This document shows, piece by piece, positions 4,724 to 59,030 of a stretch of DNA of 62,111 nt (positions are counted from its first letter, which is position 1; every line of letters begins with the position of its first letter). The DNA is from Octopus bimaculoides. Lineage: Eukaryota. The DNA lies in NCBI RefSeq assembly GCF_001194135.2, contig NC_068996.1, positions 54,436,065-54,498,175 on the forward strand. The letters are read 5' to 3'. The notes beneath the pieces were generated by a model. The model did not search any database. It was not told the DNA's origin and saw nothing but the letters and a program-made list of their open reading frames with translations. The position numbers and the translations under genes are program-made.

Positions 4724-4759
<36 letters not shown>

Positions 4760-17472: not shown

Positions 17473-19160
17473 TTATGACGTGTAAGTTATATTGAAGACA
17501 ATATTCACGTCCGTAGACGTTTTTTAACTCCTCATCAACCCTTTCCGAGTAGGCCTACGACCAAAAGCATTCCAACCATGATTCTAGCATCTTCACTTTC
17601 TTCGGGCATAGTATATCTAGGACTACAGTCATCCAGTGAGATCGTCCCATTTTTTTTAATTTCGGGGCAATTTTCGACTGGTATTTCTAACAAATAAACA
17701 ACCATATGGAGCCAGTTTTGTTGGATCATTTCGGTTGCTTGTAATTTTGAATTTATTTTATCAGTTTCTTTATTTTTAGGCGTGAGTATAATCTTATTCA
17801 GGATGGTGGTGTTATCATTAACTATATTTCATGAAGTCTATATTTGCATATTCCGACCACCACCAGTGGAATCCTACTTGCTCACTTATATTGATAATTA
17901 TCAATAAGTAATTTTATGTTAAATTTAGACACCAAAGCTTTCTTTAATGTACACTACATTTGGAGGTTTACTTCTGGTATACTAGCCTCACATGAATTTA
18001 TGGACTACTTTTAAGATATACCAATAAAGTTGTGAAATTACAAAAATAAAACCAATAATTTGCCGATAAAAATCTACGTAGAAGCACAAGGCTTTCGGTT
18101 GTGGAAGGGACGCATACATAACATAACTACGGCAAGAGATTCCACAGGTAGGGACAAACTTACTCTATTCAGCTCCTTACAAATATAATTATTATGTAAT
18201 ATAGCTAATGGTGGATCTATTTCAATAAATGACGACCCCATCGGGGAAATTCCATTTGGTTATAAGCGTGTTTGGTTATATTGATCCACAGTGTTTCTCT
18301 GATATTTATTTTTACGATCCCAAAAGGATGTAAATGGTTAATAAGATAAAGTAGCTATCAAGTAGTGAAGTTGATATATTGAACTCAATCAAAATAGAAG
18401 CTTTGTTCCAATGTTAGAAATCAATAATAGACGTGACGTGCATGCATGAGAGTATGCTCGTGTTCGTGTATGCCTAAGGAAGATTTTGTTACAAACCATA
18501 CGGCAACAAATTCATTTATTATATGTAAAAAAGTTTATGTCCAGTTTTATTTCAAGAAGGTAATTTTAGTTAAAATATGCATATTATTTTAAATCGAGAC
18601 TAGAAACAATTACTTATACAGAATTTAATATATGGTAATAATTAGTTCATATTCCCTATGGTGAGTTGCTAAATGTCCCTTATACACTAATTGCCAATTC
18701 TCTTCCATTAGACGATATGTTCTGAATATTAACTAGTATATAAACAGCTTAAACTAAAAGAGAAGGCGTGGTTCTAACTTGCATCAAAGCCGACGAGAGA
18801 CTAGAATTGGTCAAAGCCACAATCATTTATGTCTTAGATAAATAGGTTTTCTGCACAAGTCATAAACCTCAAATTCGCTCTAATGTAATACTGGAAATGA
18901 TTTCCTATATGGAATTAATCATAGGCTTTGTAGTGTGCAACATAATTTTTATTGTAGTGTGTTACATAATTAATATTAGCTGCCATATCAAAGCCAACAC
19001 TCATACACATACACACACACGCACACATATAAATATAAATATACGTGTGTGTGTGTATATATACAATTTAATATTTCGCCAGTTTATTAGTATGATAGGT
19101 TCAAAACAGCGAACAGTTTCGCGCGCGCGAGCGAAAATGCATATGCTTGTGTGTGTGTGT

Positions 19161-25283: not shown

Positions 25284-25807
25284 ACAAATAAATTTTTAAT
25301 TTGCTGAGATACCTTTCTTCGTTGAAGGAAGAAAATATAAATCCAGCTGCAAGTATTAGTGACTCTCAAGGAAAAAGGAGAAAATTTCAAAAATTGAAGG
25401 AAAAAAATTTGTCGAGTGAGGGGGCAAAGTTAGGAAAAGGGCAATCCGATCTTTGTTTGCAGTCAAGGGACAACGTAGATATAGGTTTCGGTCTTTTTGA
25501 CGGTCTATGTTTTAACATCACTGATCTCATTTTTACACACAGTGTATGACTATGCATGTATGTATGTATGTATGTATGTATGTATGTGTATATGTGTATA
25601 TGTGTATATGTGTGTGTACGTATGCATACATACATGTATATATGTATGTGCGTATGTATGCATGAATGTATGTGTGTACGTATGTATACATGCATCTAGA
25701 TATGTATGTATGTATGTTTGCATATATGTATGCCTCTGCTATTATTTAATTATTATAAATCTTTAATTATTATAAATGTCTCTGCTATTTTTTAATTATC
25801 ATAAATC

Positions 25808-29851: not shown

Positions 29852-30104
29852 GTATTGAATTATTGCCCAAAAGATATGAAAGCCGACATCTGTGTTCATT
29901 TGAATCGGAAAGTCTTTTGCGAACATCCGGCTTTCCGATTGGCAAGCGACGGCTGTCTGCGAGCTCTAGCCATGCATTTCACGATGACTCATAGTGCACC
30001 GGGTGATCTCATCTATCATCAAGGAGAAAGTTTAGACTCATTATGTTTTGTGGTCACTGGATCTCTTGAAGTTATTCAAGACGACGAAGTGATTGCAATT
30101 CTTG
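29852..30104 (+). CDS. eag: EAG K+ channel coding exon (end of C-linker, start of CNBHD); 253 nt, phase 0 to 1
   Basis: tag|GTATTG...CTTG|gtaagt; [43 protein letters not shown]...[35 protein letters not shown] closely matches Kv10/KCNH1/eag. Confidence 0.97.
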
Positions 30105-31324
30105 GTAAGTAAAATAACTATGAGCTGTAATATAAAGCTTCTTTCTTTTTTTTTTAATAGTAATAACATTTTACTGTGCTTAGGAATATGAAAATGGTAG
30201 TATGAATAAGGTGGTGGGATTCTAGAAATGGCATAATACCAGAATAAATGTTTTGTAACTTCTTGTCGGGTTGAAAAATACTTGTTAAATGATCTTTTCA
30301 ATATTGGGGTTTAACAAAATGAAGAGCGTTTTGATATTGATGAAGCTGTTCTCGGCATACATAAACCTCAGAAGAAACCTTTTATCCCCGCTGAATCATT
30401 GTCCAACATATCTCTGTGAATCTTGTATGTATTTCCTTCGATATTCTCTTACATTGATCTGTGGTTTTTGCTTCCTGAAAGTTCTCTTTGGTCGTTACTA
30501 TTTTACATTCTGGTAGCAAATTGCAAGTTGTTACAGCATCGGACGAAATGCCTTGTGATATCTATTCCAACCTATTTACAACTCAGTTAAACTCCCAAGG
30601 GGTTCATTTTTCCCATTCATTTTTCTGAGGAAAGTTCCAATCTAGGATGATGGGCTTTCAGAATCATTACATCGTCGAACGCCATACCTTGCACTATTCG
30701 TTCCGACTCTTTGCATTCTGAGGTAAAATCCAACCGTACCCTGCACGTATAGCTGGTAATTTTTTTCCATCGCCTGGTTTAACATTAGTACCTGTTCGTG
30801 GGTGCATGAAATGGAAACCATACTGTTGCAAGTATATGGGGCTAGTGTCTGATTATAGAATAACTTCCTACCTTCTTCCAAGCAGTCTCTGAGGTTCTAT
30901 AAAGGGTTATGAGCCCTACACCTGACTGCCGATACAAAAGGATGGTCATGGCTAGAATGCTTTTTAGTTTAAATCCACTTGGTTTGCGTCAACATGGTAA
31001 AAGAATCAACAAAAGACAAAAGCATGAGTTTTATTCATGCGAAAGTCAAGTTCCTCATCAAATACAAACCGAACCACAAGTGATGTAATCTCTTTCACAT
31101 CTACTGACTGTCTTTCCTCCTCCCTCCCTCCCTCTCTTTCTCTCTATCTCTCTTTATCTCTATCTCTCTCGTCTTCTTTCTTCTCGTTCTCCTCTCTTGT
31201 CTCTTACTGCAAAAGTGCGTAACAGGAATTAAGAAATCAGATTGATTGGCTACTTAACAGGAAATAACAATAAAACTGAGACTCAGTGACTCAGAAAGAT
31301 GATGCCCTGCTTATTAAGTGATTA

Positions 31325-31374
<50 letters not shown>

Positions 31375-31598
31375 TATATATATATCATGGTTGGATGGAT
31401 CTGTATATATTAATTGATAGACAGANNNNNNNNNNNNNNNNNNNNNNNNNNNNNNNNNNNNNNNNNNNNNNNNNNNNNNNNNNNNNNNNNNNNNNNNNNN
31501 NNNNNNNNNNNNNNNNNNNNNNNNNNNNNNNNNNNNNNNNNNNNNNNNNNNNNNNNNNNNNNNNNNNNNNNNNNNNNNNNNNNNNNNNNNNNNNNNNN

Positions 31599-31649
<51 letters not shown>

Positions 31650-32087
31650 TCTATGTATGTATATATAGAGAGAGGGAGCAAATATAAACATGTGTATACA
31701 CTTATCAGTTATTTTGCATATAATTTTTGTTTCATTATTTCATCACATTTAAAAAACATTTAAATATTTCAATAAGTATTTTTTTTATGGAACCTCTTTT
31801 CGACTAATCGTTTTTACTGTTTCTTTAGTTCAAGAAGTGCTGAACCCAATTTAAATTTCTATCAAACATATCTCGAGTATTTAGAAAGACATTTTATTGT
31901 CGAGCCAACACAGGATTTTCCACGTGGTCGTTGGACGTGTTAGAAATAGCAAGAAAATGTCGTCCGACAAACAATACTGTACAAGGTTTAGAAAAGGATT
32001 CATAGGTGAATGTATTCGGGAGTACATAATGCCTGAGAGAAGATCTGAGATGTCACGGCTGGAAAATCGTTAATAATAGGTTTAGTC

Positions 32088-32716
32088 TAGTGGTTTTCAA
32101 CCTGGGTCCATATGGCCCTTCTGGGTCCTCATAAGAGTTTGTTGTTAAAATTTATTGGTTAAATTTCCGCAATAAACAAAATATTTCAGCAATTTTTTTT
32201 AATACAGTAATTAATATTATTTAACCATAAAAATATTCCTTTATTCTTCTTTTTTAATTTTTTGTTTGTTTCAGTCATTTGACTGTGGCCATGCTGGAGC
32301 ACCGCCTTTAGTCGAGCAAATCGACCCCAGGTCTTATTCTCTGTAAGCCTAGTACTTATTCTATCGGTCTCTTTTGCCGAACTGCTAAGTTACGCGGACG
32401 TAAACACACCAACATCGGTTATCAAGGGATGTGGGGAGACAAACACAGGCACAGAAACATATATATATATATATCATATATACTACCAAATCCACTCACA
32501 AGGTTTTGGTCGGTCCGAGACTATTGTAAAAGACACTTGCCCAAGGTGCCACGCAGTGAGACTGAACCCAGAACCATGTGGTTGGGAAGAAAGCTACTTA
32601 CCCCACAGCTACTCCTATGTAATAGGATTTTTTAAATACTGAATGGCTACGGGAACCCCCATGAATAAAATAGGAACCAAAGGGATTCATAGGAAACAAG
32701 TAGTTAAGAACCACTG
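32088..32716 (+). mobile_element. hAT-type MITE carrying a nested SINE B
   Basis: Ends tagtggttttcaacc / agttaagaaccactg; 8-bp flanks gtttagtc / gattagtc; same family as 35359-35607 in opposite orientation. Confidence 0.75.
32262..32617 (-). mobile_element. SINE family B
   Basis: Reverse complement of the family B consensus seen at 23289 and 45589. Confidence 0.88.
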
Positions 32717-32762
32717 GATTAGTCGATCGGTAAGGAGCCTAAACAGCAACAACGTTTTACTC

Positions 32763-33083
32763 TATTTACATTATTTACATTTGACGGATATTTGTCCTCA
32801 TCTTGTTTGTTGTTAACACAATGTTTCGGCTGATATACCCTCCAGCTTTCATCAGGTGGCTTGGGGAAATTTCGAACTTGGGTTCTCATTCCTAAGGTAT
32901 TTTTTCAATGTTGTTATTATATTATTATTATTATTCAGGTCACTGCCTGGAATCGAACTCGGAATCTTGGGCTCAGTAGCCCGCGCTCTTAACCACTACA
33001 CCATGTGCCCGTGAGCATATGGCGTAGTGGTTAAGAGCGCAGGTTACTAACCCCAAGATTCCAAGTTCGATTCCTGGCAGTGG

Positions 33084-33146
<63 letters not shown>

Positions 33147-33362
33147 CAACAACAATAATAATAATGATAATAATAATAATAATAATAACAACAACAACAT
33201 CGAAAAATACCTTATGAATTTCCCCAAGCCACCTGATAAAGGCTGGAGGGTATATCAGCTGAAACGTTGTGTTAACAACAAACAAGATGAGGACAAATAT
33301 CCGCCAATTGTAAATAATGTAAATAACGTACATTAATTCCTCATCTCTTAAATATGGAACTG
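32763..33362. mobile_element. Palindromic (fold-back) retroposon: two outward-facing tRNA-like heads, AAT/AAC tracts and hammerhead-like motifs
   Basis: Arms are reverse complements about the centre 33011/33012; A box tggcgtagtgg and B box gttcgattcc on each arm; 12-bp duplication aacgttttactc (32751-32762) / aacgctttactc (33363-33374). Confidence 0.85.
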
Positions 33363-34689
33363 AACGCTTTACTCACGATCGAATTTTTGGCGTTGACTAA
33401 GAAAATCACATTAATGTAAATCCACAACCAATGTCTGTCAATATTGGACGATATAATTCCTTAATTATTATCCGTTTACATACTACTGCTCTTACGTTCA
33501 GTCATACACACTCGCATATACACAAACAGACGCATATACTGACGTGCATACATGCTACATAGTAAAATGAAATATAACGGATTGTAATATACAAATACAT
33601 ATTATATTTGGCTACTAGTAGTAGCCCCAGCATGCTAAAGATGGCAGTTAAAACAACTCAAAACCACAGTTTTCACTTGTACACAAGGGCGAAATCGAGG
33701 GGACGAGCAGTAACATTTTAAGACCTCGTACCATAGACGAAAGGAATCGAAAATGAAAATTAGACATGCCCATATCACAATGATTTCGAACTTTGTGAAT
33801 GATCACTTTGTTCTCGTCAGTGAATAATACTGAACCAGGGTCAAAAACATTCCCGCTTCAACTATCTGCTGCATAATCATGCTACCTTTAGCATGCTATT
33901 GTTACAAGTAGTACCCTTCATTTCTAAATTGATAATTTTACCTTTATGGTTCTTTTACGTATGCTAGTATTTTGAATATACATTGCAATGCACCTTTAAC
34001 GACTTTTGAATTACTTATTTACAAAAATATGTTTGGCTTATGACGGCTTATGAAAACTGTATATTATCAACGTATTTGCTGTCAAATTTTGATATATTAT
34101 TAGCAATGAAGATGAAATATAGCGCTCCAGGTTTTCATAGATTTCAATGAAATGACAGAGCGGAAGTGTAGCGAAAAAACAGCTTCCTTTTTAGTTCACT
34201 TTATTACTGACATACGGTCCTGAGACACATAAGCACCACGATATATTTTAAAGTCAACGGAGAACGTTCGATTTGCTAGAGAGGCTTGACGCAAACATAA
34301 CTCGAAGCATAACATTTTCTAATATTTATAGAATACCTATTTCCTGTTAAGGATGAATGACTAGCAAGTGTAGTAAAATAAGTGAAAACAATGGTTCTCC
34401 AAGGAAGCATTTCCACCACTTCGTAAAAATATTAGTGAAAATACATTTTGCTTTCTCTTTATTAATGAATAGACGAAATAGAATTTGTATCCATATTAAT
34501 TATTCTTTTTTTGCCGTTGTGTTGGATAACTTTAGAAAGTGTAAACCAAATTTATTTGACCTTAACTAATGACAGTCGTTTTGCTATGTAATTGAAACTG
34601 CAGTCATCCAGTAAGTGATAAATAAGTGTAAGGTTTTCTTTGCGGGGTGGGGATTGTCTAACATTCTATCATTTATAGTAAAATCTTAG

Positions 34690-34709
34690 CTGATTTATTA
34701 TTATTATTG

Positions 34710-34785
<76 letters not shown>

Positions 34786-34796
34786 CATTATTATTA

Positions 34797-34860
<64 letters not shown>

Positions 34861-34905
34861 CATTATTATTATTATTATTATCATTATTATTATTATTATT
34901 AATTA
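34690..34905 (+). repeat. (ATT)n microsatellite
   Basis: Direct reading. Confidence 0.97.
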
Positions 34906-35358
34906 TTATTAAGTCTTGTAAGCAAGCTTTAGCGAAACTACTTCAGATACTATTCCAGAGTTTCCTTGCAAGTGGTAAACTTCCTAAAAACCTAAAAGAA
35001 GGCATTATATATCTTATCCACGAATTTGAGAATACACTGTCTTTCTATAAGGGTTCCTTTTTAGTTTTATATTTTCCTTTCATTTCACGTCTTTGATAAT
35101 ATGGTAGACCACATTCTTAATTAATATTCAATTTATAATTATTTTATTATATTTTGTTAAATATTTCCAAGATTGAATAACTGAATATCAAAAAAGTCGG
35201 TTAACTTCAAAACGGATCGATTGAATCTACGACATATTTTTTATATAAATGGAAAAAAAATTGTTTAAAAAATCGGAAAGTAAGAGGAACTCGGAAGGCG
35301 TGATAGATTTATATGCAGGTCTATGAGTGTAAGATGTTTTAACAAAGAACGTTTAAAC

Positions 35359-35607
35359 TAGTGTTTCTCAACCATTTTTCACCATGAATCCCTTTGATTG
35401 CTATTCTATTCAGATTGACCTAGTTATTCGATTTCCAAAAAATCATTTCATATTTTCATAATTAGATATTATTAGGAATTGTGTTTAAAAAATATTAAAA
35501 TATTTTGTGTATTGGAGAAGTATAACCAGTTTATAGCAGATTAATTTGAACAATTGAATCTTTTATTGACCCCCGAGGGTCATACAGACCCTGGTTGAGA
35601 ACCACTG
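35359..35607 (-). mobile_element. hAT-type MITE (249 bp)
   Basis: Inverted ends tagtgtttctcaacc / ggttgagaaccactg; 8-bp flanks gtttaaac / atttgaac. Confidence 0.8.
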
Positions 35608-37179
35608 ATTTGAACTATAATAAGAAACATAAAGAAAGGATTTGAGCTCTGTAAAGAGAAACGAAGTCAAAGAAAAAAATTAAAAAAATACAAAAACGCA
35701 GGTAAATGTCCGGAGAGGTCTGACTGTAAAAACAAAAGCTGGTAAAATCCGCAGAGAGGAGAGGCGATAACTGTGATACGAATTTGATAAAGTCTGCAGG
35801 AAAAAAATTGTTGTTTTGAATGGATTAAAAGCTGGAACTGACTGACCTTGCGTAAAAAAAATATTTTTTGGAAGTACATGGTGTAAAACAATATAACGGA
35901 GTAGACAGATTATATTTCGTTTTCAAAGCATTTTTTTAATCCAATATATTCTAATATACATGTTCAATCCATACCCAACAAAGGTCGAATTTAAAAAGAA
36001 AAGCAAATAGAATATAAAGCCCTAAAAATACGTCGAGTTATTTGAAAGAAAAGTAGAAAGTAAAGGGAGATAAGCGGTAGGGGAAGTTGTGTGTGTTTGT
36101 TAAAGACACAAGATGGTGGGTGAATAGTGATATGAATATATAAGGAATACATATGTGTGGGTATGCGTGTGTCTGCAAGACGGTTTGTGTAGGTATGTAT
36201 GTGTTAACATGCCGACGTGCAAGGGAGCGTAGGTGTTCCAAAGAGGCAAGATGGAAGAAGTGAGGCATTTAGAAACTAAGATGAGAACCATAGAATAGGA
36301 TAGTCAAGAAACAGTCGAAAACCGTTAGTTATGAAAAATCAATGAGTCGCGAATCTCAGCAATGTGTATGTATAAATAAGAAGCGTAAAGGTATGGGAAA
36401 GAGTGATGGAAGAGAAGTGCGTACATATGAGGATGTTGTGTTGGTATGTTAAGGGCGTATGCGTAGGTGTGAGGGTAAGTTGAGATGTGGATAGTGAGAG
36501 GGGATTGTAGAAAGGGGAAGTAGGAGTAAGAGATGTATATTGATGAAGCAGCTGGAGTGAACATGTAATTGAGGTGGTGAATTTAGACCGTTTCGAACGG
36601 AGATTAATCTTTCTTGGAGATTAATCTTTCAGCATTGTATCAGCTTCGATGAACGAGTAATGGCTAGAGAGAATAAACAAGGCAAACTTGGTTTCACGAG
36701 AACTCCTACATCGTGGAATGTAAACACGGCATGGTTACGTTTGCGGGCCTTCAAAGGAGAGTCCCTCTTCACAAACTCGCCAACCTCCAAAGTTGATTAC
36801 ATAAATCTGTATTCGAACGTCAATAGGCAGTTAGGACTGGTCATAAAACTAAATAGACATAGGAATAGTCAAGATAAGTTCATATTTGATAGTCAAACGA
36901 GTAAAGATAATCGTCTAGACTAAGTATCAGATATCAATAGCATTACCAGAGATATTAGACTGGACACTTGACAAGATCTACAACTTGGCTCTCAAGACTA
37001 GAAAGATACTAAAGACGACTGGTAACTTTCATTTCACGGATGACGCTGAGGCAATATATATTAAATAGATGGGGTGGATGAATGGATGGATGTGAGTAGA
37101 GCCAGAAGATCAGTTCAGACAGCCTTTGAATGCCGCGTTACTTAGACAACAATAACATCTGAACGCTAAAGTGAGAAAC

Positions 37180-37860
37180 TAATACATCCCATGTACACGC
37201 TTCAGCGAAATTAATGTAATGAGATTAGGTGAATAACTCGTAATCAAGTATTCTGAGGGCACAACAGTTCCATGTGAACCAATGGTGGCTGGATTAATCT
37301 GCGTAAACAGAGACTTTGATAAGAAATATTCGTCATACCAGCAGGAAGTTATGCATAGATATTTTTCCCGAAAGTTTGAGAATACCAACGGTATTAACAG
37401 ACCTAGTTTCTCTTGGGCTTTGCAGGCTCTCCAATTACTATTCTGAAACAGAGGATAGCCACTAAATATCTGACCAACAAGAAAGATAATGTTTTTAAAA
37501 TTCCATGCTGCGATAGAAAGTGATGATTGTGTCGTACGAATGTGGAAGAAATCATACATAAATATCCGCAACCTTCCCATGAGACGTGATACTGATGTTA
37601 TCCGTCTGCAACGCTATACGTAGGAAGGATTGTTCTAGTAGACATACCAAAGCAGGCACACCAAATCCAGAATGTATACTCATTTTTAAAGTAAAGAACC
37701 GGTAGGACAAGCAATTCGTTGCATGCACAACAGAACAAATGTTGTTCTGTGGAACAGAGAAGAAAAGTTCTGCACAGTTGTAGATGCCAACTACCCGGCG
37801 GATCACATGAAAATCTGAGGAAAACGAAAACTAATAATACGAGTACGGACAACTAATAAG
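37180..37860 (+). mobile_element. Highly degenerate RLE-type (R4-like) non-LTR fragment
   Basis: ILKQRIATKYL, LPMRRD and AIRCMHNRTNVVLWNREEKFCTVVDANYPAD resemble the HNRPD..W...E..CP endonuclease region. Confidence 0.6.
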
Positions 37861-38245
37861 AAACCTTCAGCTCTTATATCGAGGTTGTAGATTATCATTT
37901 GTATCTATTGTTTATGTATGTGGCAAGGCATTTTTGTTCTCTTGTTTTCAGCTTTTGTTTTACTCCAGACAGCTCAAGGGATTCATGGGTACATGTATGC
38001 GAATGGGATTATCTTATTTAGGTACTCTAGACTACAACAACAACAGATTTGTATAAAAGCCTAGAAATACTAGGTTTCTCCAAACAGTACAAAGAAAACT
38101 GATTCGCATTCTCCAAACACAATCAATCAAAGATACATTGAAAATCTGTGAAACATTAAATGGATTTTCTTTTCTGAGATTCTTTGGGGCGAACACTGTG
38201 CATATTTGCATATGCAAGGAATTTATACACGCACGCGCGCGCGCG

Positions 38246-38301
<56 letters not shown>

Positions 38302-38889
38302 TGTACTAAAATGACATGCACACCTACTGCAAGATAATCTCACTCACATACATGTACACGCACACATATACATGCGCAACCCAACTAATTCAGATATCCA
38401 CAAACCCCTTCAGCTGTCTGGACTAAAACAGAGGCTGAAAACGAGAAAACAAAAGAACTTTGCCACATACATACGTACATACATGTACATACATACATAT
38501 GTACATACATACATGCATACATATATGCATATATACATACACACATACATNNNNNNNNNNNNNNNNNNNNNNNNNNNNNNNNNNNNNNNNNNNNNNNNNN
38601 NNNNNNNNNNNNNNNNNNNNNNNNNNNNNNNNNNNNNNNNNNNNNNNNNNNNNNNNNNNNNNNNNNNNNNNNNNNNNNNNNNNNNNNNNNNNNNNNNNNN
38701 NNNNNNNNNNNNNNNNNNNNNNNNNNNNNNNTAGATGCATGCATACATGCATACATGCATACATACATACATACATGCATACATACATACATGCATACTT
38801 ACATGTATGCATACATATACATACATACATACACAATCATACATGCATACATACAATCATACATACAATCATACATACATGCATGCATG

Positions 38890-38921
<32 letters not shown>

Positions 38922-39299
38922 CATACATACACATGCATTCACAAATACATATATACATACACAAACACAGACAAACATACGAACATGCATAAATACATAG
39001 GCAAATAGCAGACATTAAAATTCACAGCATACACAGAGACAGCCCAGAAGAACAGGTAGACATACAGATAAACAGGGAGGCAGGTAAACTTATGAATATG
39101 GTTGGATCTTGTATGCCAAATGTTGAGCTGAAAATTTTGATCAGCTGGGCTTAGTCAAGCAATTAGCAGACAGAAATCCTCGGTGGATGCGTTTAAAATC
39201 AAAATAGTAACTGCAAAGATAATTTCAAATTTTGGGGACACTACAAACCTTATCATATAGGTATGCAGAACACTCCCTTACAGAATTTACCTAAAACTA

Positions 39300-39358
<59 letters not shown>

Positions 39359-39424
39359 GGCAGGCAGGCAGGAGGGAGATAGAAATAGACAGATGGTCAT
39401 AAAGAGAGAGAGAGTGGGAGTAAG

Positions 39425-39496
<72 letters not shown>

Positions 39497-41546
39497 GGAT
39501 AGATAGATAGATAATATGAGAATGTTTCCAGCCGTTTAGAATGAACATATAGATTCAGATTTATCATATTGATTTGTTCGTTCGATTTTCCTTTAGAGTA
39601 ATTCACAACTAACCAACAAGTTGATAATATAAAGCAATTAGCCCATCACGCTTCCTTTGGTGTGGTCGCTTTGACTGGCAAAACCAATATAATGAATGAT
39701 TCCATTTCCTCTTCTTTGGACTCGTAATTTCAGTATGCTTAATATATTAGATCGATGTAAACTCTGTGTAATGTCTGAAGTACATGCAGATTTCCAATAG
39801 CAGTTAGCGTATTTCCATATAAATTAACAGACAAGCATACGTATTTAAATAATGTCATCTGAAAGGCGAAATAACACGTCACAAATCTCTTACTGTCTTT
39901 TATTCCATTTTTCACGATTTTCTACTTTTGTGTTTAATTTTACAAAGAGCGGTAATGAGACTGTGAAACGGCGCTTTCGACACTTTACTTTATTTTGTTT
40001 ATTGCCCCCACAGTATAGAGTTCAAATTTCGATGAAGTCAACATTGCTTTTAATCCAAGCGGTGTCAATAAAATTCGTACCTGTATTATGCTAGAATAAT
40101 TACACCATTTCCATAAAAGAAAGGGCGACAGCCTACTTTGCAGTTTATTAACCAAAAGATCTAAGATTCGTATTCTGTCGATAGTGCTGTGGGATGATAC
40201 TCTTCCTCACCACACTTAGTTGAAGCACTTAATATCTAATAAAGGTTTCATTAAGTTAACAGTGCTCAGATAAACTGAGCTCGAATTCTCTCATGAAAAA
40301 AAAAACAGCCTTTAACCTACTGATGCTTCCATTCAGGAAGAATGATGTTTCTCTGTGAATTAACATTTCTGACAACTATGATAATCTCCAGCTTATTTCG
40401 CCAACATCACATTTTACATGACACAAATCTACAGAGTGACCCAAATGACTTGCTTCTACAATTTGACGAGATATTCTAACTTTGTGTTTAGTTGGCTCAT
40501 TTCACTTATAATTACAATACAATATCTGTTTGGTCGGTACTAAGAAAATTATCCTGCTTAGTAAAATTACATGACATCATAACTGTATTATACCATTCCC
40601 AAAAATTGGTTCGAAGTCATTTTAAAAAAGGCAAAATAGTTTTAATATATGAAGCACTCAAGCAGAGTCTATAAACCCTAAAATTTCGAAACCATGTAAA
40701 TAGTTAACGAATAAACTTACATCAGTGTGATTAAATCCAAAGGATGTAAACGCCAATGTACTTGGAGCCAAAACAGTTGCTGTTGTTGTTTAAGGATTTC
40801 TTTCTTTAAGACAGTTGCTAATTTGCGGTTCGAGGGAGATGTGGTTGCTATTTCTAGCAGAGGGAGCCATCAAGTAGCAGCTCCCTCATCGGCTCAACAA
40901 AATAGTTCTTTGTATGTGCAGTATTAAGGTTTGATCAATGTGTCATTAAGCAGCGTCTCTCAGACTGACAAAAGCTCTCCCCCTCCTCCGCCAAAATATT
41001 AGTCTTGTTTTACTGACACCATCTCCGCTCTTTAGTAATGAGAAGACAAAACAGAGTTTACATCAATATAATTTCTTTTTACGCCAAGCTGTTGGATAAA
41101 TTTTAAATGTTTTAAGCAATATCTTAATTTTATTAAATGGCAAATTATACGTCCCATTGTCAATCCCTATTTCTCGACCCTATGAGAAGCACTAACCAAG
41201 AACATATATTGTCATATGTTTCTTTATTCTATACACGTCTGTGTATAAATATATGGGTGTATCTCTGTGGTGAGGCGAGTGTAAATGTGTGTATGTGCGT
41301 GTATTTCAGATATATCTAAAAGGATCGATTCCTAGAAGTAAAATTAGTCTCTTGATACTCGGACAGAAATTATAGTCAAACGATGCAACAGTTACTGAAT
41401 TACTGCGAAAACAAAACCTTCCCGCAGCTCGGTGCGAATATAATTATTATGTAGCTTTTATTTTAATTTTCTTTCTTATTTTGTTGTGTATTTTCGACAA
41501 ATTGGACGAAAACTGAAAATCAGTTTTAATATAAGAGATTCTATTT

Positions 41547-41741
41547 AAGGAAGGAAACTGGCAGAATCGTTAGCACGTCGAGGAAAATGCTTAGCGGCGT
41601 TTCGTCCGCCTTTATGTTCTGCGTTGAAACTTCTCCGAAATCGACTTTACTTTTCATTCCTTTCGGGGTTGATAAAATAAGCACAATGGGAGTACAGAGG
41701 TCGAAATTGCTGGCCTTGTGCCAAAATTTGAAACCATTATT
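41547..41741 (+). mobile_element. SINE family A with internal deletion
   Basis: ctggcagaatcgttagcacg..ggggttgataaaataag..ccttgtgccaaaatttgaaacc. Confidence 0.85.
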
Positions 41742-42413
41742 AAAGAATATGTTCCTTCGAAATCCTAGCTACACCTATAAGAATAAACTGATTATGATCT
41801 GAATTTTTCAAAACTTAATGGGTTTTTTTATATATATATTTGTGAATATAAAAGTATGTACAATGGCAAATATCTTCAGCCAATATTGATAAACACATTT
41901 TCTTTATTTTCACATATTCTTCATCTGACCATTAATATCCCTCCCTTTCACTAATTTTGATGCTGCGTTCATATCAGGTGGTCGATTGGTCTCCACAGTT
42001 AATAATCTTAATCTGAATATTCCCTGTGTTTGTTGTTTTTTAATTATCAAAACTGTAGCTGCATTCAGGTTTGTTGGCATCTTGTATGCTTCTTCCTTGT
42101 TGGCAATCTTCCTATATAAATTCCTATTTCTTTATTTTTAGGAAAATCTTATATAAATAAAATATATAGTAGCCATTTTTATCCATCCAAGTGAGATTTT
42201 TTTACCTTCTGTACAAGTCTATTTGGATCAAATCAATTGATGTCGCTAATATATCGAAGAACTGTTTGTCAGCACCTATATTTAGAACTGATTCCAACGC
42301 TTTTTATCATTAGTTTGTTGTAAGACAAGCTCTATGTATTTCTTAGGTCAGAACGTTATCATTTAGCAGTACTCGTACACATACAAACACATACACGTAT
42401 AGATGTGTGTGTG

Positions 42414-42481
<68 letters not shown>

Positions 42482-44369
42482 NNNNNNNNNNNNNNNNNNN
42501 NNNNNNNNNNNNNNNNNNNNNNNNNNNNNNNNNNNNNNNNNNNNNNNNNNNNNNNNNNNNNNNNNNNNNNNNNNNNNNNNNNNNNNNNNNNNNNNNNNNN
42601 NNNNNNNNNNNNNNNNNNNNNNNNNTATATATATATATATAATACGTATATGTATGTATGTATGTATGTATTTATATTTGTCTACTTTTAAGAGAAAGTG
42701 GATCTACAACAGTTACTCATTCGGTTTGTAAGTAGCTCAATGTTTGTTATCAACTTACATTCCCTAAATTAAATCTGTTACTAATCAGTTTTAAGTTTGG
42801 AACCGTATCAAATCAATTTTCTTTGGCATAAAATGTAGGGTCTCTATAAAAACATGTGGTAAGAGTTGATATTCTTTAATTTTGAATAAACCATAATTTT
42901 TTTAAAGGAATTAATTATGCTAGTATTTTGCCAAATGAAGAGCAGGAAAAAATAAAATAAATATTGAAGTGAGCTTTTTTTAATAATAGAGTTCTCTACA
43001 CGTAACAACAGAATGGTTGATAGTTTTCCTCTTTTGTGTGTTTCATCTAGACGATTTTTTTCTCGGTATCTGTATAGTTCTATTCAAGTCCCTTTCTTAA
43101 TATCATCCATGTAATCAACCAGCAAATGTAACACAACAAAATATCCTCGTTTTTTGAACAAGGTTTCTGTATTTATTGGCTTTCATTAATACTTTATTCA
43201 TAATTTCATTTAAATACATTTGAATGTTTAAACGTTTTGAATGTTTAAACGTTTTGAATGTTTAAATTTCATACTACCGGATTCGATAAAATTTGTTTTA
43301 AATTCTATGATTATTATTTTGGTAATATTAATGTTAGTTAACTCTCGGTATTTTCATTTCTCAATTTGTTTTCTTCAATAGTGGTATTGTTGTTATTCAA
43401 ACTTGAAGGAAATTTATTATTCTCTTTGTGTATTGTAAAACCCAACTTATTAAACACATTTTTTTCTCAAGAATTAGGGATGCGTCTAATATATGGCATT
43501 GGAACTCAATGTTTCCCACCCTGCATAATTTATTGAGGAAAACGCAATAATGTAACTCTTTATTACTTTAAGATAATTATTTTTAATTGTATACCAATAT
43601 ATTTTAAAAACTAATATATCGGATTGTAGTACAACATTGACAATGGTAGCTGTCGTGCAATGCACTGTCTTAACTCAATTTATGCCCCAAATTTGAGATA
43701 CATGCTATAAATGATAACATATTATCTACAGACTATTGTGGTAGGCTATATCAGGAATTTTTTTTTATTATGGATTTTCGGGGTTCTTTTTCTTTTTGCA
43801 TTTTTAAAAGAAAATTTAATTTCCCATTTATTTTCGCCAATCTTGGAAGCTTGAAAAACCAAAGTCGAGGATGGAAAATTAAACGTCGAAAATTGAATAC
43901 GACGATCTGATATCGACTCGCTACCCTTCAATTTTATTATTGATTTGTTTTTGTTAGACTAGACACAAAATCCCAAAGATTTATAGAAAGGTATAAATGG
44001 GAACTGTGACGCTCAAGCCTTTCCCAATGGCTTTAGAAGAGTAAGTAAATTGGTTTAACCTCAACCAGGAATCGGACCCGCATTAAAAATTGACACATGG
44101 AAACCGTAACGCTTTGTCTGCAAGACTTTTCATTTTCCTTTATAACATTTGTTTGTTGCGTGTTATTTTACATGACACGGACGTTATTACATTCTATCAA
44201 ACAAATCGGGTCCCAGTTCTGTGTTAGTTACTAAAGAGAATTGAGGAAACACAAAATAATAAATAATTTGTATTCACTCGCCTACCTTAGACTGATACTA
44301 AAAATACTTTCATTTACTTTCCTTACACATTTGCATTAAACGTAATTAGAAAATTTATGATACTTTAAC

Positions 44370-44940
44370 CGAATGCCGTCTTAGATGTGAGAACAATCCA
44401 TTGTGGTCGTCACCTCGACTTATTGTAGGGCATGAAGTATCTTCTGGCCCTTAATAATAACAGCTATGTTAGGGATGTGCTTTCGTCAGAACAGATTCTC
44501 GGTGATAGTAAGACCCAAAAATTAGAGCGATTTTGAGGGCTCTAGCTGAGTGATGCACATGATTAAGGTAGGAGTGCAATCAAAATTTGTTGATAGAAGA
44601 AGCGTTTATGTTTTCTTGTTGTTGAAAGAGACTTCTGCTCATTGGACGGTATCTTCAAGTTTTCTCTTCTCGTTGTCAGTGTACGATTAGCGTGTAATAT
44701 CCAGGTTGCAAACGGATAATGAAAAATCGGTGTATATTAGGGAGGAAAGAAGGAAATAAAGGGTAGTGTTGTGGTACGTAAGTCCTTGATGTATAAGAGG
44801 AGAATGGAAGATCAAACCAAAACTCGGGGTACGCTAGAATTTCTAGAATGGAGGGCAGAAAGAACTTCATCAACATGTAAGCTAACGATCCAGGTTGTTT
44901 GTGTACGCGTAAGTACGTGTGAATGGCCGCATATGTCAAC
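44370..44940 (-). mobile_element. Ancient CR1/L2-group LINE RT fragment
   Basis: Minus-strand NSSVPRVLV*SSILLLYIKDL (cf. GVPQGSVLGP.LFLLYINDL), LGLTITENL, TTMDCSHI*DG; heavily decayed. Confidence 0.5.
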
Positions 44941-44980
44941 ACACTGAATCGAGCATTAATATTATATTTTATTTCTTTTT

Positions 44981-45208
44981 AAGGTGGTAAGCTGGCAGAA
45001 TCGTTACGGTGCCGGGCGAAATGCTTAGCGGTTTTTCGTCCGTCCTTACTTTCTGAGTTCGAATTCCGCCTAGGACGGCTTTGCCTTTCATCCTTTCGGG
45101 ATCGAAGAAATAAGTACCGGCCAAGGACTAATGTCGATGTAATTGACTTAATCTCGCCCCTGAAATTTCTGGCCTTCTGCCAAAGTTTAAAACCAATATT
45201 ATGTTTTA
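44981..45208 (+). mobile_element. SINE family A inserted into the polypyrimidine tract of the EAG acceptor
   Basis: Full-length copy; ttttatttctttt at 44967-44979 and 45209-45221, directly followed by cag|exon. Confidence 0.88.
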
Positions 45209-45224
45209 TTTTATTTCTTTTCAG

Positions 45225-45421
45225 GTAAAGGTGATGTCTTTGGAGACAACTTTTGGAAGGAATCAACAGTTGGACAATCTGCTGCTAATGTAAAAGCACT
45301 TACATACTGTGATCTTCATGTTATAAAACGAGACAACTTGTTAAGTGTTTTGAAATTCTATCATTCATTTTCTCATTCTTTTGAGCGGAACCTGACGTTG
45401 ACATACAACCTGAGACACAGA
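45225..45421 (+). CDS. eag: EAG K+ channel coding exon (CNBHD C-terminal half and intrinsic ligand); 197 nt, phase 1 to 0
   Basis: tcag|GTAAAG...CACAGA|gtacgt; [66 protein letters not shown]; in frame with both flanking exons. Not in the ORF track. Confidence 0.97.
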
Positions 45422-45985: not shown

Positions 45986-47067
45986 AATAACGCACACACC
46001 CCAGTTCTTCTGTCTACCAGTCATGAAGGATTAGTAGCGCATTCATTGACAAATAATTTGAATGATTATAAAGACATGCCTTAATTTTTAGTTATTTTCC
46101 TTTCTTCGGCGCCATCCGTTCGTTAGATCCGTAGTTTTTAAACTTTACTTTATAGAAATGCTACTCCCACGTTTTTGTTAATGCTGAAGAAAAAAAAGTA
46201 AGTGTTGTTTTGCAGCAAGAAATTTATGTACCTTCTCAAGTGTTTTGGATTCCACCCGACCACCACCTTTTCTTTCTTTTCTTTTTAAGTAATCCCTTCT
46301 CAAAATCATATATAATTCTTTCTTTTACGAGTATTATATGCAATTTCTTGGTTGTATATGATACACTTTGTGATACCATCGGGTATCGGGCAACTTTTTC
46401 AATAATGTTCACAATGAATTGTTTATCATACGGTTTATACAATTCTACACCATGCTGTCTTGTACTACATTTATACAATTCAGTGCAGACGTTCAAAGTA
46501 CCGTATTTGTTCATGCATGAGCCGCACCACTAATTTAGTGTTAAACCTTGGTACAAAATGTTTTCTGTTCACAGTTTTAGTTTTGCCCCCGTGTTTAAGT
46601 TCCAACCCAGTTTGTTCTTGTTTGTTTTTGATTTTTTTTTTCAATTAAAATCAAGAGTAAAATAGTACAACTTATACAGAAGTAAATAAAGTATTAACAA
46701 TGGAGCTAGATATACTCCGTGATACACAAGTCACTCTGCACACTTTGGAAACAAGTGTTCGAAACGCAATTATTGTAGGGATACTACAACGAAGAGCACC
46801 ATATACAGCCAATACAAGGGATTATAACACGCACATACACACACGCATATTCATACCTACATACATACATACGTACGTACATACATACATACATGCATAC
46901 ATACATACATACATACATACATACAAGCATACATACATACATACATACATACATACATACATACATACATGCATACATGCATACATACATACATACATAC
47001 ATACATACATACATACATACATACATACATACATACATACATGTCTGTTAGAAATAAAAAAATTACA

Positions 47068-48765: not shown

Positions 48766-50202
48766 TTGGTATTCCGTAAGGTAGCGGATGTAAAGAAAGA
48801 GCGTGAATTAGCAGAGAAAAGAAAAAATGACCCACCTTTGGATTTATCGAGTGATCACCCGGTGCGAAAATTAATTTCTCGGTTCCGGAAAATTAGCGAT
48901 GCTCGTGCTATACAAACGGACGCCGAGTTGGATGCGCAAACAAATAACAACCATAGTGAGGTTGATGGGCCTGGTAGCGAAGCCCGTGTGATTAATGTGT
49001 CTGAGAGTCCGCCTCAAACAAGTAATGTGCCTAAACTAGGCGGAGGAGGAGGAGGAGCTTCTAAATGGAATAAGTTTTTAGGGAAGGAGAATGGTAGGTC
49101 TTCAGATATTGCGAGATCATCTGATCATGGGAAGCCAGATTATTATAAAACGACCGGAAGTAATGTTGAGCATAATATACAGTGTGAGGAACCTAAAATA
49201 CCTGACATTACAAGCCGATCATCTGTGAAGCAACTTTCGAAATGGGGCCGAATAATAGCAAAGCAACAGGATACTATCGTCGAAGACCCTGAAGACGAAT
49301 TGAAATCAAATCTACAGAAGAGTGACTCCACAGATAGTGGCATACTCAAAAGCAATGTAAAGCTTGATCAAATATCTGAAGAGCCACCAAATCACTTATC
49401 AGCTAATGTTTTGTCGACTAAATTGGTAAGTGAGAATGAAAAGACAGATAGTACCGTTGCAGAAAATACACTTGGTGCTGGATGGAGCGTTCGTTGGAAT
49501 TCAAATGAACGAGGTTTGTCGCTTGGACGACCAACAGAAACCAGCGCTAAAGAAAGATTTTTTAATATTGGAAATGCTGATCAACAAGTAATGAACTTTC
49601 TGGAAGATATTCGTCTTGAGCAAAAAGAAGAATTCAAAAGCATTAATACTAGAATCAGTCGGATAGATGAGCAAATTGGCGAAATTCTACGACTTTTTAC
49701 TCCGTCTTCATCTCCATGTTCTTCAAGATTATCTAGTTTCCCATGTTCAAAATACAATTCTCCAAACACAACTGCCACAAATACAGAAGTTACGTCACCA
49801 AAAAATTATCTTTCTTCATCTCCAAATTGGAATTCATTAGAGAGTATGCATACAGTAAGCAAAGGTTCTTCTGTAACAGGGGAACAGTTTCTCAATATAG
49901 AAGTTTCTCCTATGCAGCATCAACCCGTAGTGCCAATGGCTCAACCAGTGCGAGATGAAAGTCTAGATTCAAACACATCAGATAATGCTGTCCAGGCAAA
50001 GCCAGATACACCAACAAGCCGAAGATCCAGCAAATCTTCTAATACGTCATGGAAAAGTTTCTCGAATGAAAATAGTAAGAAAAATAAAGCAAAAAATGAG
50101 AAAGGAAAGGAGGACAAAGTAAAAGAAACAAATTTCGGTGGAAGGAAAGTTGAAGACGATGAAAATATTCCTTTCAAAGATAAAGATTTAGATATAATGT
50201 AA
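48766..50202 (+). CDS. eag: EAG K+ channel terminal coding exon (cytoplasmic tail, 478 codons, first codon is TTG=Leu)
   Basis: tatag|TTGGTA; LVFRKVADVKKERE..DHPVRKLISRFRK (CaM-binding region), KSDSTDSGILKS, heptad segment VMNFLEDIRLEQKEEFKSINTRISRIDEQIGEILRL; TAA at 50200-50202. Confidence 0.95.
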   Translation: MVFRKVADVKKERELAEKRKNDPPLDLSSDHPVRKLISRFRKISDARAIQTDAELDAQTNNNHSEVDGPGSEARVINVSESPPQTSNVPKLGGGGGGASKWNKFLGKENGRSSDIARSSDHGKPDYYKTTGSNVEHNIQCEEPKIPDITSRSSVKQLSKWGRIIAKQQDTIVEDPEDELKSNLQKSDSTDSGILKSNVKLDQISEEPPNHLSANVLSTKLVSENEKTDSTVAENTLGAGWSVRWNSNERGLSLGRPTETSAKERFFNIGNADQQVMNFLEDIRLEQKEEFKSINTRISRIDEQIGEILRLFTPSSSPCSSRLSSFPCSKYNSPNTTATNTEVTSPKNYLSSSPNWNSLESMHTVSKGSSVTGEQFLNIEVSPMQHQPVVPMAQPVRDESLDSNTSDNAVQAKPDTPTSRRSSKSSNTSWKSFSNENSKKNKAKNEKGKEDKVKETNFGGRKVEDDENIPFKDKDLDIM

Positions 50203-57989: not shown

Positions 57990-58065
57990 TAAGATAAATA
58001 TACACACACATATATACACAGAGAACGGTACACATGCGCGTGTGTATTTGTGTACATAGATACAC

Positions 58066-58096
<31 letters not shown>

Positions 58097-58208
58097 CGTA
58101 TATATATACACATTGGCTAAACCACCATATACACATAATCATACGCTTATATACGTATACATGTGTATGTGTGTGTGATAAATATGTGTGTGTATACATG
58201 TACATATC

Positions 58209-58267
<59 letters not shown>

Positions 58268-58522
58268 GTGTTATATGTGTAAATATTTACATGTATGTAT
58301 GTGTATATCTATATACACACACGCATATATATATATAGCATATATATAGCACATGTATATACGTCTATTTTTTGTGCGTGTATATTCCAGTGTTTGTGCA
58401 TGTCTATATGTACATATACACATATATTTTTATATGTTTATATGTATGTATGCATGTATGCCTGTGCATACATGTGTTTGTCTATGAAAGCATACACACA
58501 CACACACACATATATATATGTG

Positions 58523-58613
<91 letters not shown>

Positions 58614-58678
58614 ATACATATATAGATAGATAGATATACGTATATATACATGTGTGTGCATATATATTCACACGTATA

Positions 58679-58737
<59 letters not shown>

Positions 58738-59030
58738 GTGTATATACATGCATATATTAGTGTATATATATGTACATATACGTATGTGTGTGTATATATA
58801 TATATAAAATATATATATATATACAAGCATACATATATATACACGCATACACATATATATATACATAACGCATGCATACACACATATTTGCATAAACACA
58901 TATATACATACATACATTCGTTCATGCATACACACATAAATACATACATGCATGCATGTATGTATGCATACATACATGCATACTTTCGTTCATACATACA
59001 CACACACATACATACATACATTTAAATACT
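57990..59030 (+). repeat. Long mixed (TA)n/(CA)n/(TACA)n low-complexity tract
   Basis: Direct reading; all overlapping ORFs are artefacts. Confidence 0.95.

What the first reader, a model, noticed from the sequence alone, without database searches (positions are those of the whole stretch)
44951..45224. SINE inserted between the apparent branch point and the AG of an essential eag exon
Seen: ttttatttctttt occurs on both sides of the SINE (44967-44979, 45209-45221), and the downstream copy is followed directly by cag|exon. Removing the SINE and one copy gives gcaTTAATattatattttatttcttttCAG, placing a YTNAY match (A44959) about 24 nt from the AG. Inference: the insertion pushed the native branch point ~240 nt away while the TSD rescued the pyrimidine tract, so splicing now uses a SINE-derived branch point (e.g. 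near A45201) or a distant one. This would be a clean case of a tolerated or exapted insertion.
Basis: partly seen in the sequence, partly recalled or inferred. Interest (0 to 1): 0.72.

Follow-up and report, generated by a model that had tools for sequence, protein, structure and literature searches.

The report
SINE insertion beside an eag exon acceptor
A roughly 220-base mobile element (SINE) sits 24 bases upstream of a conserved potassium-channel exon, and its insertion copied the exon's splice-acceptor tract, so the exon kept an intact acceptor; this is a real but ordinary example of a tolerated insertion in a normally hazardous position.

Summary
TTTTATTTCTTTT occurs only twice in 62 kb, and the two copies abut the ends of a short interspersed repeat that has at least 9 copies in the window. 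The second copy is followed by CAG and then a 197-nt exon of a KCNH1/eag-type channel gene, whose neighbouring exons splice to it in frame.

The duplication is longer than reported. It is a perfect 15-mer, and probably 21-22 nt starting at A44958/9.

So the insertion probably split that motif rather than simply pushing it away.
- The exon-proximal copy keeps AAT plus the T-tract.
- The SINE's own 3' end (…AAACCAATATT) rebuilds nearly the same 30 nt in front of the AG.
- The SINE holds ten AGs, and only 38 nt before the acceptor are AG-free. A branch point 240 nt away is therefore unlikely. The working branch point should lie in the SINE tail or the duplicated tract.

New point: the upstream copy keeps the intact TTAAT and T-tract and is now followed by the SINE's TAAG|GT. 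This is a decoy acceptor whose use would add 241 nt and end at a TAA.

No related genome could be retrieved, so the empty-site test and all RNA evidence remain open. This is a known kind of event; interest is modest.

The parts
29852..30104 (+). Upstream eag exon (253 nt; …[22 protein letters not shown]…DDEVIAILG). It ends CTTG|GTAAGT, phase 1.
   Evidence: tblastn with mollusc eag proteins gives 87-90% identity. The splice junction test gives AILG|KGDVFGD only with the exon ending at 30104, which is followed by GTAAGT.
30105..45224 (+). 15.1-kb intron that carries the SINE at its extreme 3' end.
   Evidence: Bounded by the donor at 30105 and the acceptor AG at 45223-24.
44955..44961 (+). CATTAAT, the best branch-point candidate of the reconstructed empty site (A44959). 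It now lies 266 nt from the exon and 24 nt upstream of the decoy AG.
   Evidence: Branch-point scan: YTNAY match, 5/6 U2 pairs, -24 in the empty-site reconstruction. The background for YTNAY is 0.62 per 30 nt, so this is a candidate only.
44958..44979 (+). Upstream copy of the target-site duplication. The perfect core is 44965-44979; the probable full extent is 44958/9-44979.
   Evidence: The AATAT start is supported by other copies of the family.
44980..45200 (+). SINE-like element, full length, in the same orientation as the gene. It is 85.8% identical to the 8-copy window consensus. The 3' boundary is ambiguous: 45194, 45200 or 45206.
   Evidence: Family copies and shared ends. Divergence. 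Ten internal AGs. No tRNA call by ARAGORN or Rfam.
44982..44983 (+). AG of a decoy acceptor made of the upstream duplicate T-tract plus the SINE's first bases (tttctttttaAG|GTGGTAAG).
   Evidence: Sequence. Use of this AG would add 241 nt; the frame stays open through the SINE and stops at TAA 45226-28. Use is not shown.
45186..45222 (+). AG-free zone in front of the authentic acceptor. This is the expected location of the working branch point. Candidates are A45189-92, A45196, A45198, A45201 and A45208.
   Evidence: AG positions and the candidate table. That branch points lie in or just upstream of the AG-free zone is established splicing knowledge, not tested here.
45195..45221 (+). Downstream copy of the duplication, which serves as the polypyrimidine tract. 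The perfect core is 45207-45221; the ungapped version is 45201-21; the gapped version is 45195-221 with an extra GTTTT at 45203-07.
   Evidence: The last 21 nt are 81% pyrimidine.
45222..45224 (+). CAG of the authentic acceptor.
45225..45421 (+). 197-nt eag exon (…[65 protein letters not shown]), part of the cyclic-nucleotide-binding homology domain. Its donor is AGA|GTACGT.
   Evidence: 73-83% identity to invertebrate eag exons. Pfam cNMP_binding E = 4.7e-13. KCNH1 structures 6pbx and 5k7l, E about 6e-98. The length is not a multiple of 3, so skipping would shift the frame.
48766..50202 (+). Last eag exon (478 codons to the stop). Its acceptor is TTTTATATAG|TTGG, preceded by two CTAAT motifs at -38 and -31.

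Best explanation
A SINE-like retroposon of about 215-221 bp inserted, in the same orientation as the gene, into the last ~25 nt of the 15.1-kb intron that precedes a 197-nt exon. The exon encodes part of the cyclic-nucleotide-binding homology domain of a KCNH1/eag-type K+ channel gene in a mollusc genome.

The insertion has the form expected of LINE-driven target-primed reverse transcription. Staggered nicks duplicated 15-22 nt of target. One nick fell 3 nt before the exon (…CTTTT|CAG). The other fell in or next to the TTAAT motif that is the best branch-point candidate of the empty site.

Because the two copies flank the element, the exon-proximal copy keeps the whole polypyrimidine tract and the CAG. 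The element's own A/T-rich 3' end (…AAACCAATATT) is identical to the start of the target (AATATTAT). The 30 nt in front of the AG are therefore almost what they were before the insertion: ttAATATTAT-ATTTTATTTCTTTTCAG became ccAATATTATgttttATTTTATTTCTTTTCAG.

The exon is then most likely still spliced normally, using a branch adenosine within the 38-nt AG-free zone 45186-45222. That adenosine would lie in the SINE tail, at the SINE/duplication junction, or in the duplicated tract. This explains why the insertion is tolerated.

What is shown:
- the element, its ends and the duplication;
- the exon structure and the intact reading frame;
- the AG-free zone.

What is inferred:
- the insertion mechanism;
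- the position of the working branch point;
- that the insertion is fixed and harmless.
For: - Unique flanking repeat abutting both ends of a multi-copy element.
- The element's 3' end, CCAATATT, is shared by 5-6 of 7 copies.
- AAT[AG]T lies 6-28 nt upstream of 5 of 7 element heads, against 14.5% of random 30-nt windows. This fits microhomology between the target and the element tail, and a duplication that starts at 44958.
- Three consecutive eag exons join in frame with canonical GT/AG sites, giving an open frame to the terminal stop. They have strong KCNH1 identity.
- The last AG before the acceptor is at 45184-85, and the SINE holds ten AGs.
- The element is about 14% diverged from the window consensus, which argues against a very recent insertion.
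- Literature: dog SINE insertions at -15/-16 (14-bp duplication), -35 and -9 from acceptors disturb splicing (PMC3976383). SINEs are depleted within 100 bp of exons, yet some are fixed there (PMC3088655).
Against: - There is no RNA evidence of any kind, so normal splicing is inferred only from the intact, conserved reading frame.
- No ortholog or second allele is available, so fixation, age and the empty site are unverified.
- The present branch-point candidates are all weaker than the ancestral CATTAAT: at most 4/6 U2 pairs against 5/6.
- The consensus rests on 8 diverged copies, so both the 14% divergence and the 3' boundary are rough. Two copies carry 27 further shared bases after CCAATATT. 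A TATGTTT motif recurs after several tails, so 45201-06 could be element rather than duplication.
- Other copies show no statistically clear duplication.
Confidence: 0.7

Rival explanations
1. The duplication is only the T-tract (13-15 nt). The native branch point (A44959 or one further upstream) was carried 242 nt away. The exon now depends wholly on a new branch adenosine supplied by the SINE's 3' tail, which would be a true exaptation of SINE sequence as a splicing signal.
For: - Only the 15-mer is a perfect match. The six positions before it match 4/6 in AT-rich sequence.
- TATGTTT-like sequence follows the tail in several other copies, so 45201-06 may belong to the element.
- The adenosines at the usual -24 to -36 distance (45189-45201) are all in the tail or at the junction.
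- Other empty-site candidates (A44947/8, A44939) lie upstream of any version of the duplication.
Against: AATATTAT is identical at 44958-65 and 45195-202, and other copies also have AATAT at the presumed start of their duplications. This points to a longer duplication that includes the candidate adenosine. Either way the sequence in front of the AG is nearly unchanged, so 'new' and 'old' branch point are hard to tell apart.
Confidence: 0.3
2. The native branch point upstream of the SINE is still used, and the lariat forms about 266 nt from the authentic AG (a distant branch point), perhaps helped by folding of the SINE RNA.
For: - The upstream CATTAAT is the strongest U2 match in the region.
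- The minimum-free-energy fold pairs the 5' flank with the tail and loops out the SINE.
Against: - Ten AGs lie between that branch point and the exon.
- The first of them, AAG 44982-83, sits at an ideal 24 nt behind an intact T-tract, so this branch point would be expected to feed the decoy acceptor.
- The fold is not more stable than shuffled sequence: z = -1.35, with 19 of 200 shuffles folding at least as well.
Confidence: 0.05
3. The insertion is not neutral. It weakens or diverts splicing, through exon skipping or use of the decoy AAG at 44983. That would yield a frameshifted or truncated message, either as a hypomorphic or polymorphic allele or as a regulated unproductive isoform.
For: - Comparable dog insertions at -9 to -35 cause exon skipping or mis-splicing.
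- Insertions within 20 bp of acceptors are rated very likely harmful.
- The decoy has the intact branch motif and T-tract, and G at +1.
- The perfect 15-bp duplication would also fit a young insertion.
Against: - The exon and both neighbours are intact and conserved.
- The element is about 14% diverged from the consensus.
- The decoy has the poorest usable NAG (AAG, from general splicing knowledge) and would define a 438-nt exon.
- A GGTAAG 5'-splice-like motif lies 4 nt after the decoy AG and could hinder its use (inference).
Confidence: 0.12
4. The flanking repeat is coincidental low-complexity T-rich sequence and not a target-site duplication.
For: The tract is T-rich and resembles the splice-site polypyrimidine runs that are common in introns.
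Against: - The 15-mer is exact and occurs only twice in 62 kb.
- Both copies abut the family-defined ends of the element.
- The alignment score was reached by 1 of 500 shuffles.
Confidence: 0.02

Closest known systems
Canine SINE insertions at splice acceptors: FAM161A c.1758-15_-16ins238 (progressive retinal atrophy), HCRTR2 -35 (Doberman narcolepsy), SILV/PMEL -9 (merle)
   Same: A SINE of about 230 bp lands 9-35 nt upstream of a coding exon and is flanked by a duplication of about 14-15 bp. It lies between the presumed branch point and the AG (PMC3976383).
   Different: The dog cases are recent alleles with shown exon skipping or mis-splicing and a phenotype. Here the gene looks intact and the element is about 14% diverged. 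The duplication, together with the element's matching tail, rebuilds about 30 nt of acceptor context. No RNA or phenotype data exist.
Fixed SINEs inside the intronic 'underrepresentation zone' of mammals (Zhang, Romanish & Mager 2011)
   Same: A full-length SINE persists within 100 bp, here 24 nt, of an exon. SINEs are depleted in this zone, and insertions close to acceptors are rated hazardous (PMC3088655).
   Different: That work is a mammalian genome-wide statistic, mostly about Alu. The mutagenic Alus were antisense, whereas this element is sense-oriented, lacks a poly(A) tail and sits in a mollusc genome. No genome-wide count is possible from one window.
L1/Alu-type target-primed reverse transcription with microhomology between element tail and target (TTTT/AA sites, with the poly(A) merging into the duplication)
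   Same: The element's 3' end (AATATT) equals the first bases of the duplication, so the boundary is ambiguous. The duplication is 15-22 nt. The same AATAT is seen upstream of other copies. The L1 behaviour is cited from general knowledge.
   Different: There is no poly(A) tail. The partner LINE is unidentified, and the preference rests on 7 copies and a pattern chosen after seeing the data.

Membership tests
SINE (short interspersed, non-autonomous retroposon) | Short, non-coding, many dispersed copies in both orientations with common 5' and 3' ends | tested here: met
   At least 9 copies or fragments in 62 kb, at 65-86% identity to the window consensus, with shared (T)AAGGYGG head and CCAATATT tail.
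SINE (short interspersed, non-autonomous retroposon) | Flanking target-site duplication | tested here: met
   The focal copy has a perfect 15 nt, or 19/21 ungapped, with p = 0.002. The other copies in the window give no significant duplication, as expected if they are older.
SINE (short interspersed, non-autonomous retroposon) | Head derived from tRNA, 7SL or 5S RNA with an internal Pol III promoter | tested here: inconclusive
   ARAGORN and Rfam give no tRNA hit on the focal copy or elsewhere in the window. ARAGORN calls a tRNA-like fold on the consensus only at a lowered threshold. By eye, there is an A-box-like TGGCAGAATCG and a B-box-like AGTTCGAATTC (9/11 each).
SINE (short interspersed, non-autonomous retroposon) | 3' region shared with a partner LINE | not tested
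   No LINE was identified in the window and no genome is available.
KCNH / eag (Kv10) potassium channel gene | Cyclic-nucleotide-binding homology domain with closest similarity to KCNH1/5 | tested here: met
   Pfam PF00027, E = 4.7e-13. KCNH1 structures 6pbx and 5k7l at E about 6e-98, against KCNH2 at 3e-40. Mollusc eag proteins are the best named hits.
KCNH / eag (Kv10) potassium channel gene | The exon is part of an intact spliced reading frame | tested here: met
   Exons 29852-30104, 45225-45421 and 48766-50202 join in frame at GT/AG sites, with the first stop at the end. The upstream part of the gene is not in the window.
Splice-disrupting SINE insertion (HCRTR2 / FAM161A type) | Insertion within about 10-35 nt of an acceptor, between the branch region and the AG | tested here: met
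   The element ends 24 nt (range 18-30) before the exon.
Splice-disrupting SINE insertion (HCRTR2 / FAM161A type) | Shown exon skipping or mis-splicing | not testable with these tools
   No transcript data could be reached. The protein collection holds no near-identical spliced product.
Exapted SINE (element sequence serving as a splicing signal) | The branch point or other essential signal maps inside element sequence | not testable with these tools
   Only candidates exist: A45189-45201 lie in the tail or at the junction, at -24 to -36.

The most novel reading that the evidence does not exclude
The insertion nicked the native branch-point motif itself (TT|AAT) and produced two tandem acceptor cassettes. 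The upstream one is a decoy: the intact CATTAAT, the T-tract and the SINE's TAAG|GT. The downstream one is the authentic acceptor, whose branch adenosine now has SINE-derived 5' context or lies in the SINE tail. Correct expression of this eag channel would then depend on SINE sequence, and on the authentic site out-competing the decoy. The decoy might yield a +241-nt isoform that terminates early, as a form of unproductive splicing.
Probability: 0.3. Interest if true: 0.45.

Novelty: new member of a known kind. Interest (0 to 1): 0.3.

Why it matters
SINE insertions this close to an acceptor are best known as disease alleles, as in dog narcolepsy, retinal atrophy and merle. Such insertions are also depleted from fixed genomic copies.

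This locus shows in plain sequence how one can be harmless. The staggered cut duplicates the polypyrimidine tract, and an element tail that resembles the target rebuilds the branch region. If confirmed by RNA data, it would be a tidy natural example of the rules for tolerance: sense orientation, no poly(A) or poly(T) run, and a duplication that covers the acceptor. It would also be a test case for competition between duplicated acceptors.

It does not open a new question. Its value is illustrative, and it could serve as a presence/absence marker in the host lineage.

Tried and rejected
1. Ortholog empty-site test. The exon peptide search found only distant invertebrate read-through ORFs, at most 83% identical. 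One ortholog locus (L001) shows the same intron position, but its intron is unrelated. In the window the exon's own ORF has no start codon before about 45337, so it would not be called as a gene.
2. The 478-codon last exon, 3.3 kb downstream, was used as an anchor. Its best hit is 45% identical, and the named hits are gastropod, Lottia and other mollusc eag proteins. No close relative is reachable.
3. More SINE copies from outside the window.
   - Two-block pattern scans of metagenome and genome contigs gave 0 hits.
   - An 18-mer scan gave 16 and 7 hits, all chance matches of 18-22 nt.
   - A protein search with the fully open antisense frame of the consensus found no candidate.
4. Literature search for SINE core strings found 0 papers. 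The family could not be named. My recollection that it resembles cephalopod SINEs is unverified.
5. tRNA origin. ARAGORN and Rfam were negative. The whole-window Rfam run returned only microsatellite-driven miRNA noise.
6. RNA structure bridging the SINE: not significant, z = -1.35.
7. Duplications of other copies, to calibrate length: none significant. Only the shared AATAT start was informative.
8. The upstream flank 44300-44979 is unique in the window, so it is not part of another repeat.

Full report
**What is there.**
The region is AT-rich animal DNA. The exact repeat is 15 nt (TATTTTATTTCTTTT, 44965-79 and 45207-21), and that 15-mer is also unique to these two sites. The downstream copy is followed by CAG and the exon.

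**The sequence between the repeats is a mobile element.**
- blastn of 44940-45240 against the window finds nine further copies or fragments on both strands.
- In an alignment of eight copies, the 5' end is (T)AAGGYGGYRAGCTGGCAGAATCGTTAGC.
- The 3' end is …GCCTTGTGCCAAAATTTGAAACCAATATT, shared by 5-6 of 7 ends.
- The focal copy is full length: 44980 to about 45200, or 221 nt. It has the same orientation as the gene and is 85.8% identical to this rough consensus.
- It behaves as a SINE, being short, non-coding and dispersed, with defined ends and a flanking duplication.
- A tRNA origin could not be confirmed. ARAGORN and Rfam are negative, and only the consensus gives a tRNA-like call at a lowered threshold. 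The A-box-like and B-box-like motifs are seen by eye only.

**The exon and gene.**
tblastn with mollusc eag proteins maps three consecutive exons on the + strand: 29852-30104, 45225-45421 and 48766-50202.
- They join in frame only at canonical sites: CTTG|GTAAGT … TTTTCAG|GTAAAG and AGA|GTACGT … TATATAG|TTGG.
- The joined product reads …[11 protein letters not shown]…NLRHR-LVFRKVADVKK… and runs open to the terminal stop.
- It matches Pfam cNMP_binding (E = 4.7e-13). It matches KCNH1 (Eag1) structures 6pbx and 5k7l at about 6e-98, far better than KCNH2.
- The focal exon is 197 nt, so skipping it would shift the frame.
- The intron that carries the SINE is 15.1 kb long.
- The best named relatives of the last exon are gastropod, Lottia and other mollusc eag proteins, at no more than 45% identity. 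The host is therefore a mollusc with no close relative in the searchable collections.

**How long is the duplication?**
Three readings fit the sequence.
- (a) The perfect 15-mer only.
- (b) An ungapped 21 nt, 44959-79 against 45201-21, with 19/21 identity. This is the best local alignment, reached by 1 of 500 shuffles. In this reading the element ends exactly at the family end CCAATATT.
- (c) A 22-nt version, AATATTAT+ATTTTATTTCTTTT (44958-79), against AATATTAT+GTTTT+ATTTTATTTCTTTT (45195-221). It has one 5-nt unit added in an (A/G)TTTT run.

The AATATT in reading (c) is also the element's own tail. That need not be coincidence. Five of 7 element heads in the window have AAT[AG]T 6-28 nt upstream (at -22, -18, -6, -19 and -28), whereas 14.5% of random 30-nt windows contain it. 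By my arithmetic the binomial probability is about 0.001, but the pattern was chosen after seeing the data. This is what target-primed reverse transcription gives when the nicked target pairs with the RNA's 3' end, as with L1 and its poly(A) tail (general knowledge).

I therefore favour a duplication that starts at 44958/9. I cannot exclude (a). Two copies share 27 further bases after CCAATATT, and a TATGTTT-like motif follows several tails.

**Consequences for the acceptor.**
- In that reconstruction A44959 (CATTAAT) is the best candidate branch point: YTNAY, 5 of 6 possible U2 pairs, at -24.
- The gene's last intron has comparable CTAAT motifs at -38 and -31.
- YTNAY occurs 0.62 times per 30 nt here, so the match alone proves nothing.

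Under readings (b) and (c) the nick fell inside this motif (TT|AAT or TTA|AT). The adenosine is then present in both copies, and downstream only its 5' context is replaced by the SINE tail.
- A45196: AACCAAT, 4/6 U2 pairs, at -29.
- A45201: ATATTAT, with U at -2 and U at +1 kept, at -24.
- A45208: GTTTTAT, YTNAY, at -17. This one lies inside the undisputed duplication.

In every reading the 30 nt before the AG are nearly the same as before the insertion. That is the simplest reason for tolerance.

**A distant branch point is unlikely.**
The element contains ten AGs. The last AG before the acceptor is at 45184-85, which leaves a 38-nt AG-free zone from 45186 to 45222. Branch points normally lie in or just upstream of such a zone (general knowledge). 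Folding the region does close the SINE into a loop through the AAUAUU palindrome, but the fold is no more stable than shuffled sequence (z = -1.35).

The upstream repeat copy keeps the intact CATTAAT and T-tract and is now followed by the element's first bases: tttctttttaAG|GTGGTAAG. This is an acceptor-like site whose AG (44982-83) lies 24 nt from A44959.
- If it were used, the exon would gain 241 nt. The frame stays open through the whole SINE and stops at TAA 45226-28.
- AAG is a poor acceptor triplet, and the resulting exon would be 438 nt.
- A GGTAAG donor-like motif lies 4 nt downstream.

I therefore expect the authentic site to win, but that expectation is inference.

**Comparison with what is known.**
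Dog SINE insertions disturb splicing and cause disease or colour traits: at -15/-16 in FAM161A (14-bp duplication), at -35 in HCRTR2 and at -9 in SILV (PMC3976383). In human and mouse, SINEs are depleted within 100 bp of exons, and insertions within 20 bp of acceptors are judged very likely harmful, yet some full-length copies are fixed there (PMC3088655). The present case has the geometry of the first group but appears to belong to the second. It is a new example of a known kind of event, not a new mechanism.

**What could not be done.**
- No orthologous or allelic sequence could be retrieved, and no SINE copy from outside the window.
- No transcript or lariat data were available.
- Fixation, age, the true branch point and any use of the decoy site therefore remain open.

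**Verdict.**
The insertion, the duplication, the rescue of the pyrimidine tract and the empty site are right.
- Displacement of the branch point is possible, but the motif was more probably split.
- The distant-branch option is unlikely, and exaptation is untested.
- Interest is 0.3.

Noticed in passing
window 44955-44992: A decoy acceptor: the intact CATTAAT and the upstream duplicate T-tract are followed by the SINE's TAAG|GT (AG 44982-83). Use would add 241 nt; the frame stays open through the whole SINE and stops at TAA 45226-28. A GTG|GTAAGC donor-like motif lies 4 nt after that AG.
   Followed up: partly
window 45218-45230; L001 3024-3036: The authentic junction TTTTCAG|GTAAAG has an acceptor and a donor-like motif side by side, as at recursive splice sites. 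The distant ortholog has ACCAG|GTAAGG at the same position. The pattern probably follows from the Gly-Lys-Gly codons.
   Followed up: no
window, upstream of SINE heads at 44980, 41546, 52641, 17474 and 27046: Five of 7 copies have AAT[AG]T 6-28 nt upstream of the head, the same as the element's AATATT tail. Only 14.5% of random 30-nt windows contain it. This suggests a target preference or microhomology priming for this family.
   Followed up: partly
window 10184-10440 (-) and 17247-17473 (-): Two SINE copies share about 27 further bases beyond the common CCAATATT end (TACATCT…TATGTTTCGRCCTCCA). This could be a longer-tailed subfamily or a duplicated flank.
   Followed up: partly
SINE consensus built from window copies (alignment A1): One antisense frame of the consensus is open for all 72 codons, and the focal copy lies within a 95-codon antisense ORF (44979-45266). 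This is probably chance. A protein search with the consensus frame found no candidate.
   Followed up: yes
window ~38430-38735 and ~42480-42630; also 4300-4730, 25530-25720, 46780-47050, 58000-59020: There are assembly gaps (runs of N) and many microsatellite tracts, for example TG/CA-type and CATA-type. The microsatellites produce dozens of spurious sub-threshold miRNA matches in Rfam (mir-297, mir-3149, mir-466).
   Followed up: no
window 45225-45421 compared with 29852-30104 and 48766-48891: The focal exon is less similar to gastropod eag (73-79%) than its neighbours are (87-93%). It has lineage-specific HSFSHSFE in place of HAFANSFA. The same exon is also the more variable one between Lymnaea and Lottia, by my count from the sequences, so this is not a sign of decay.
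   Followed up: partly
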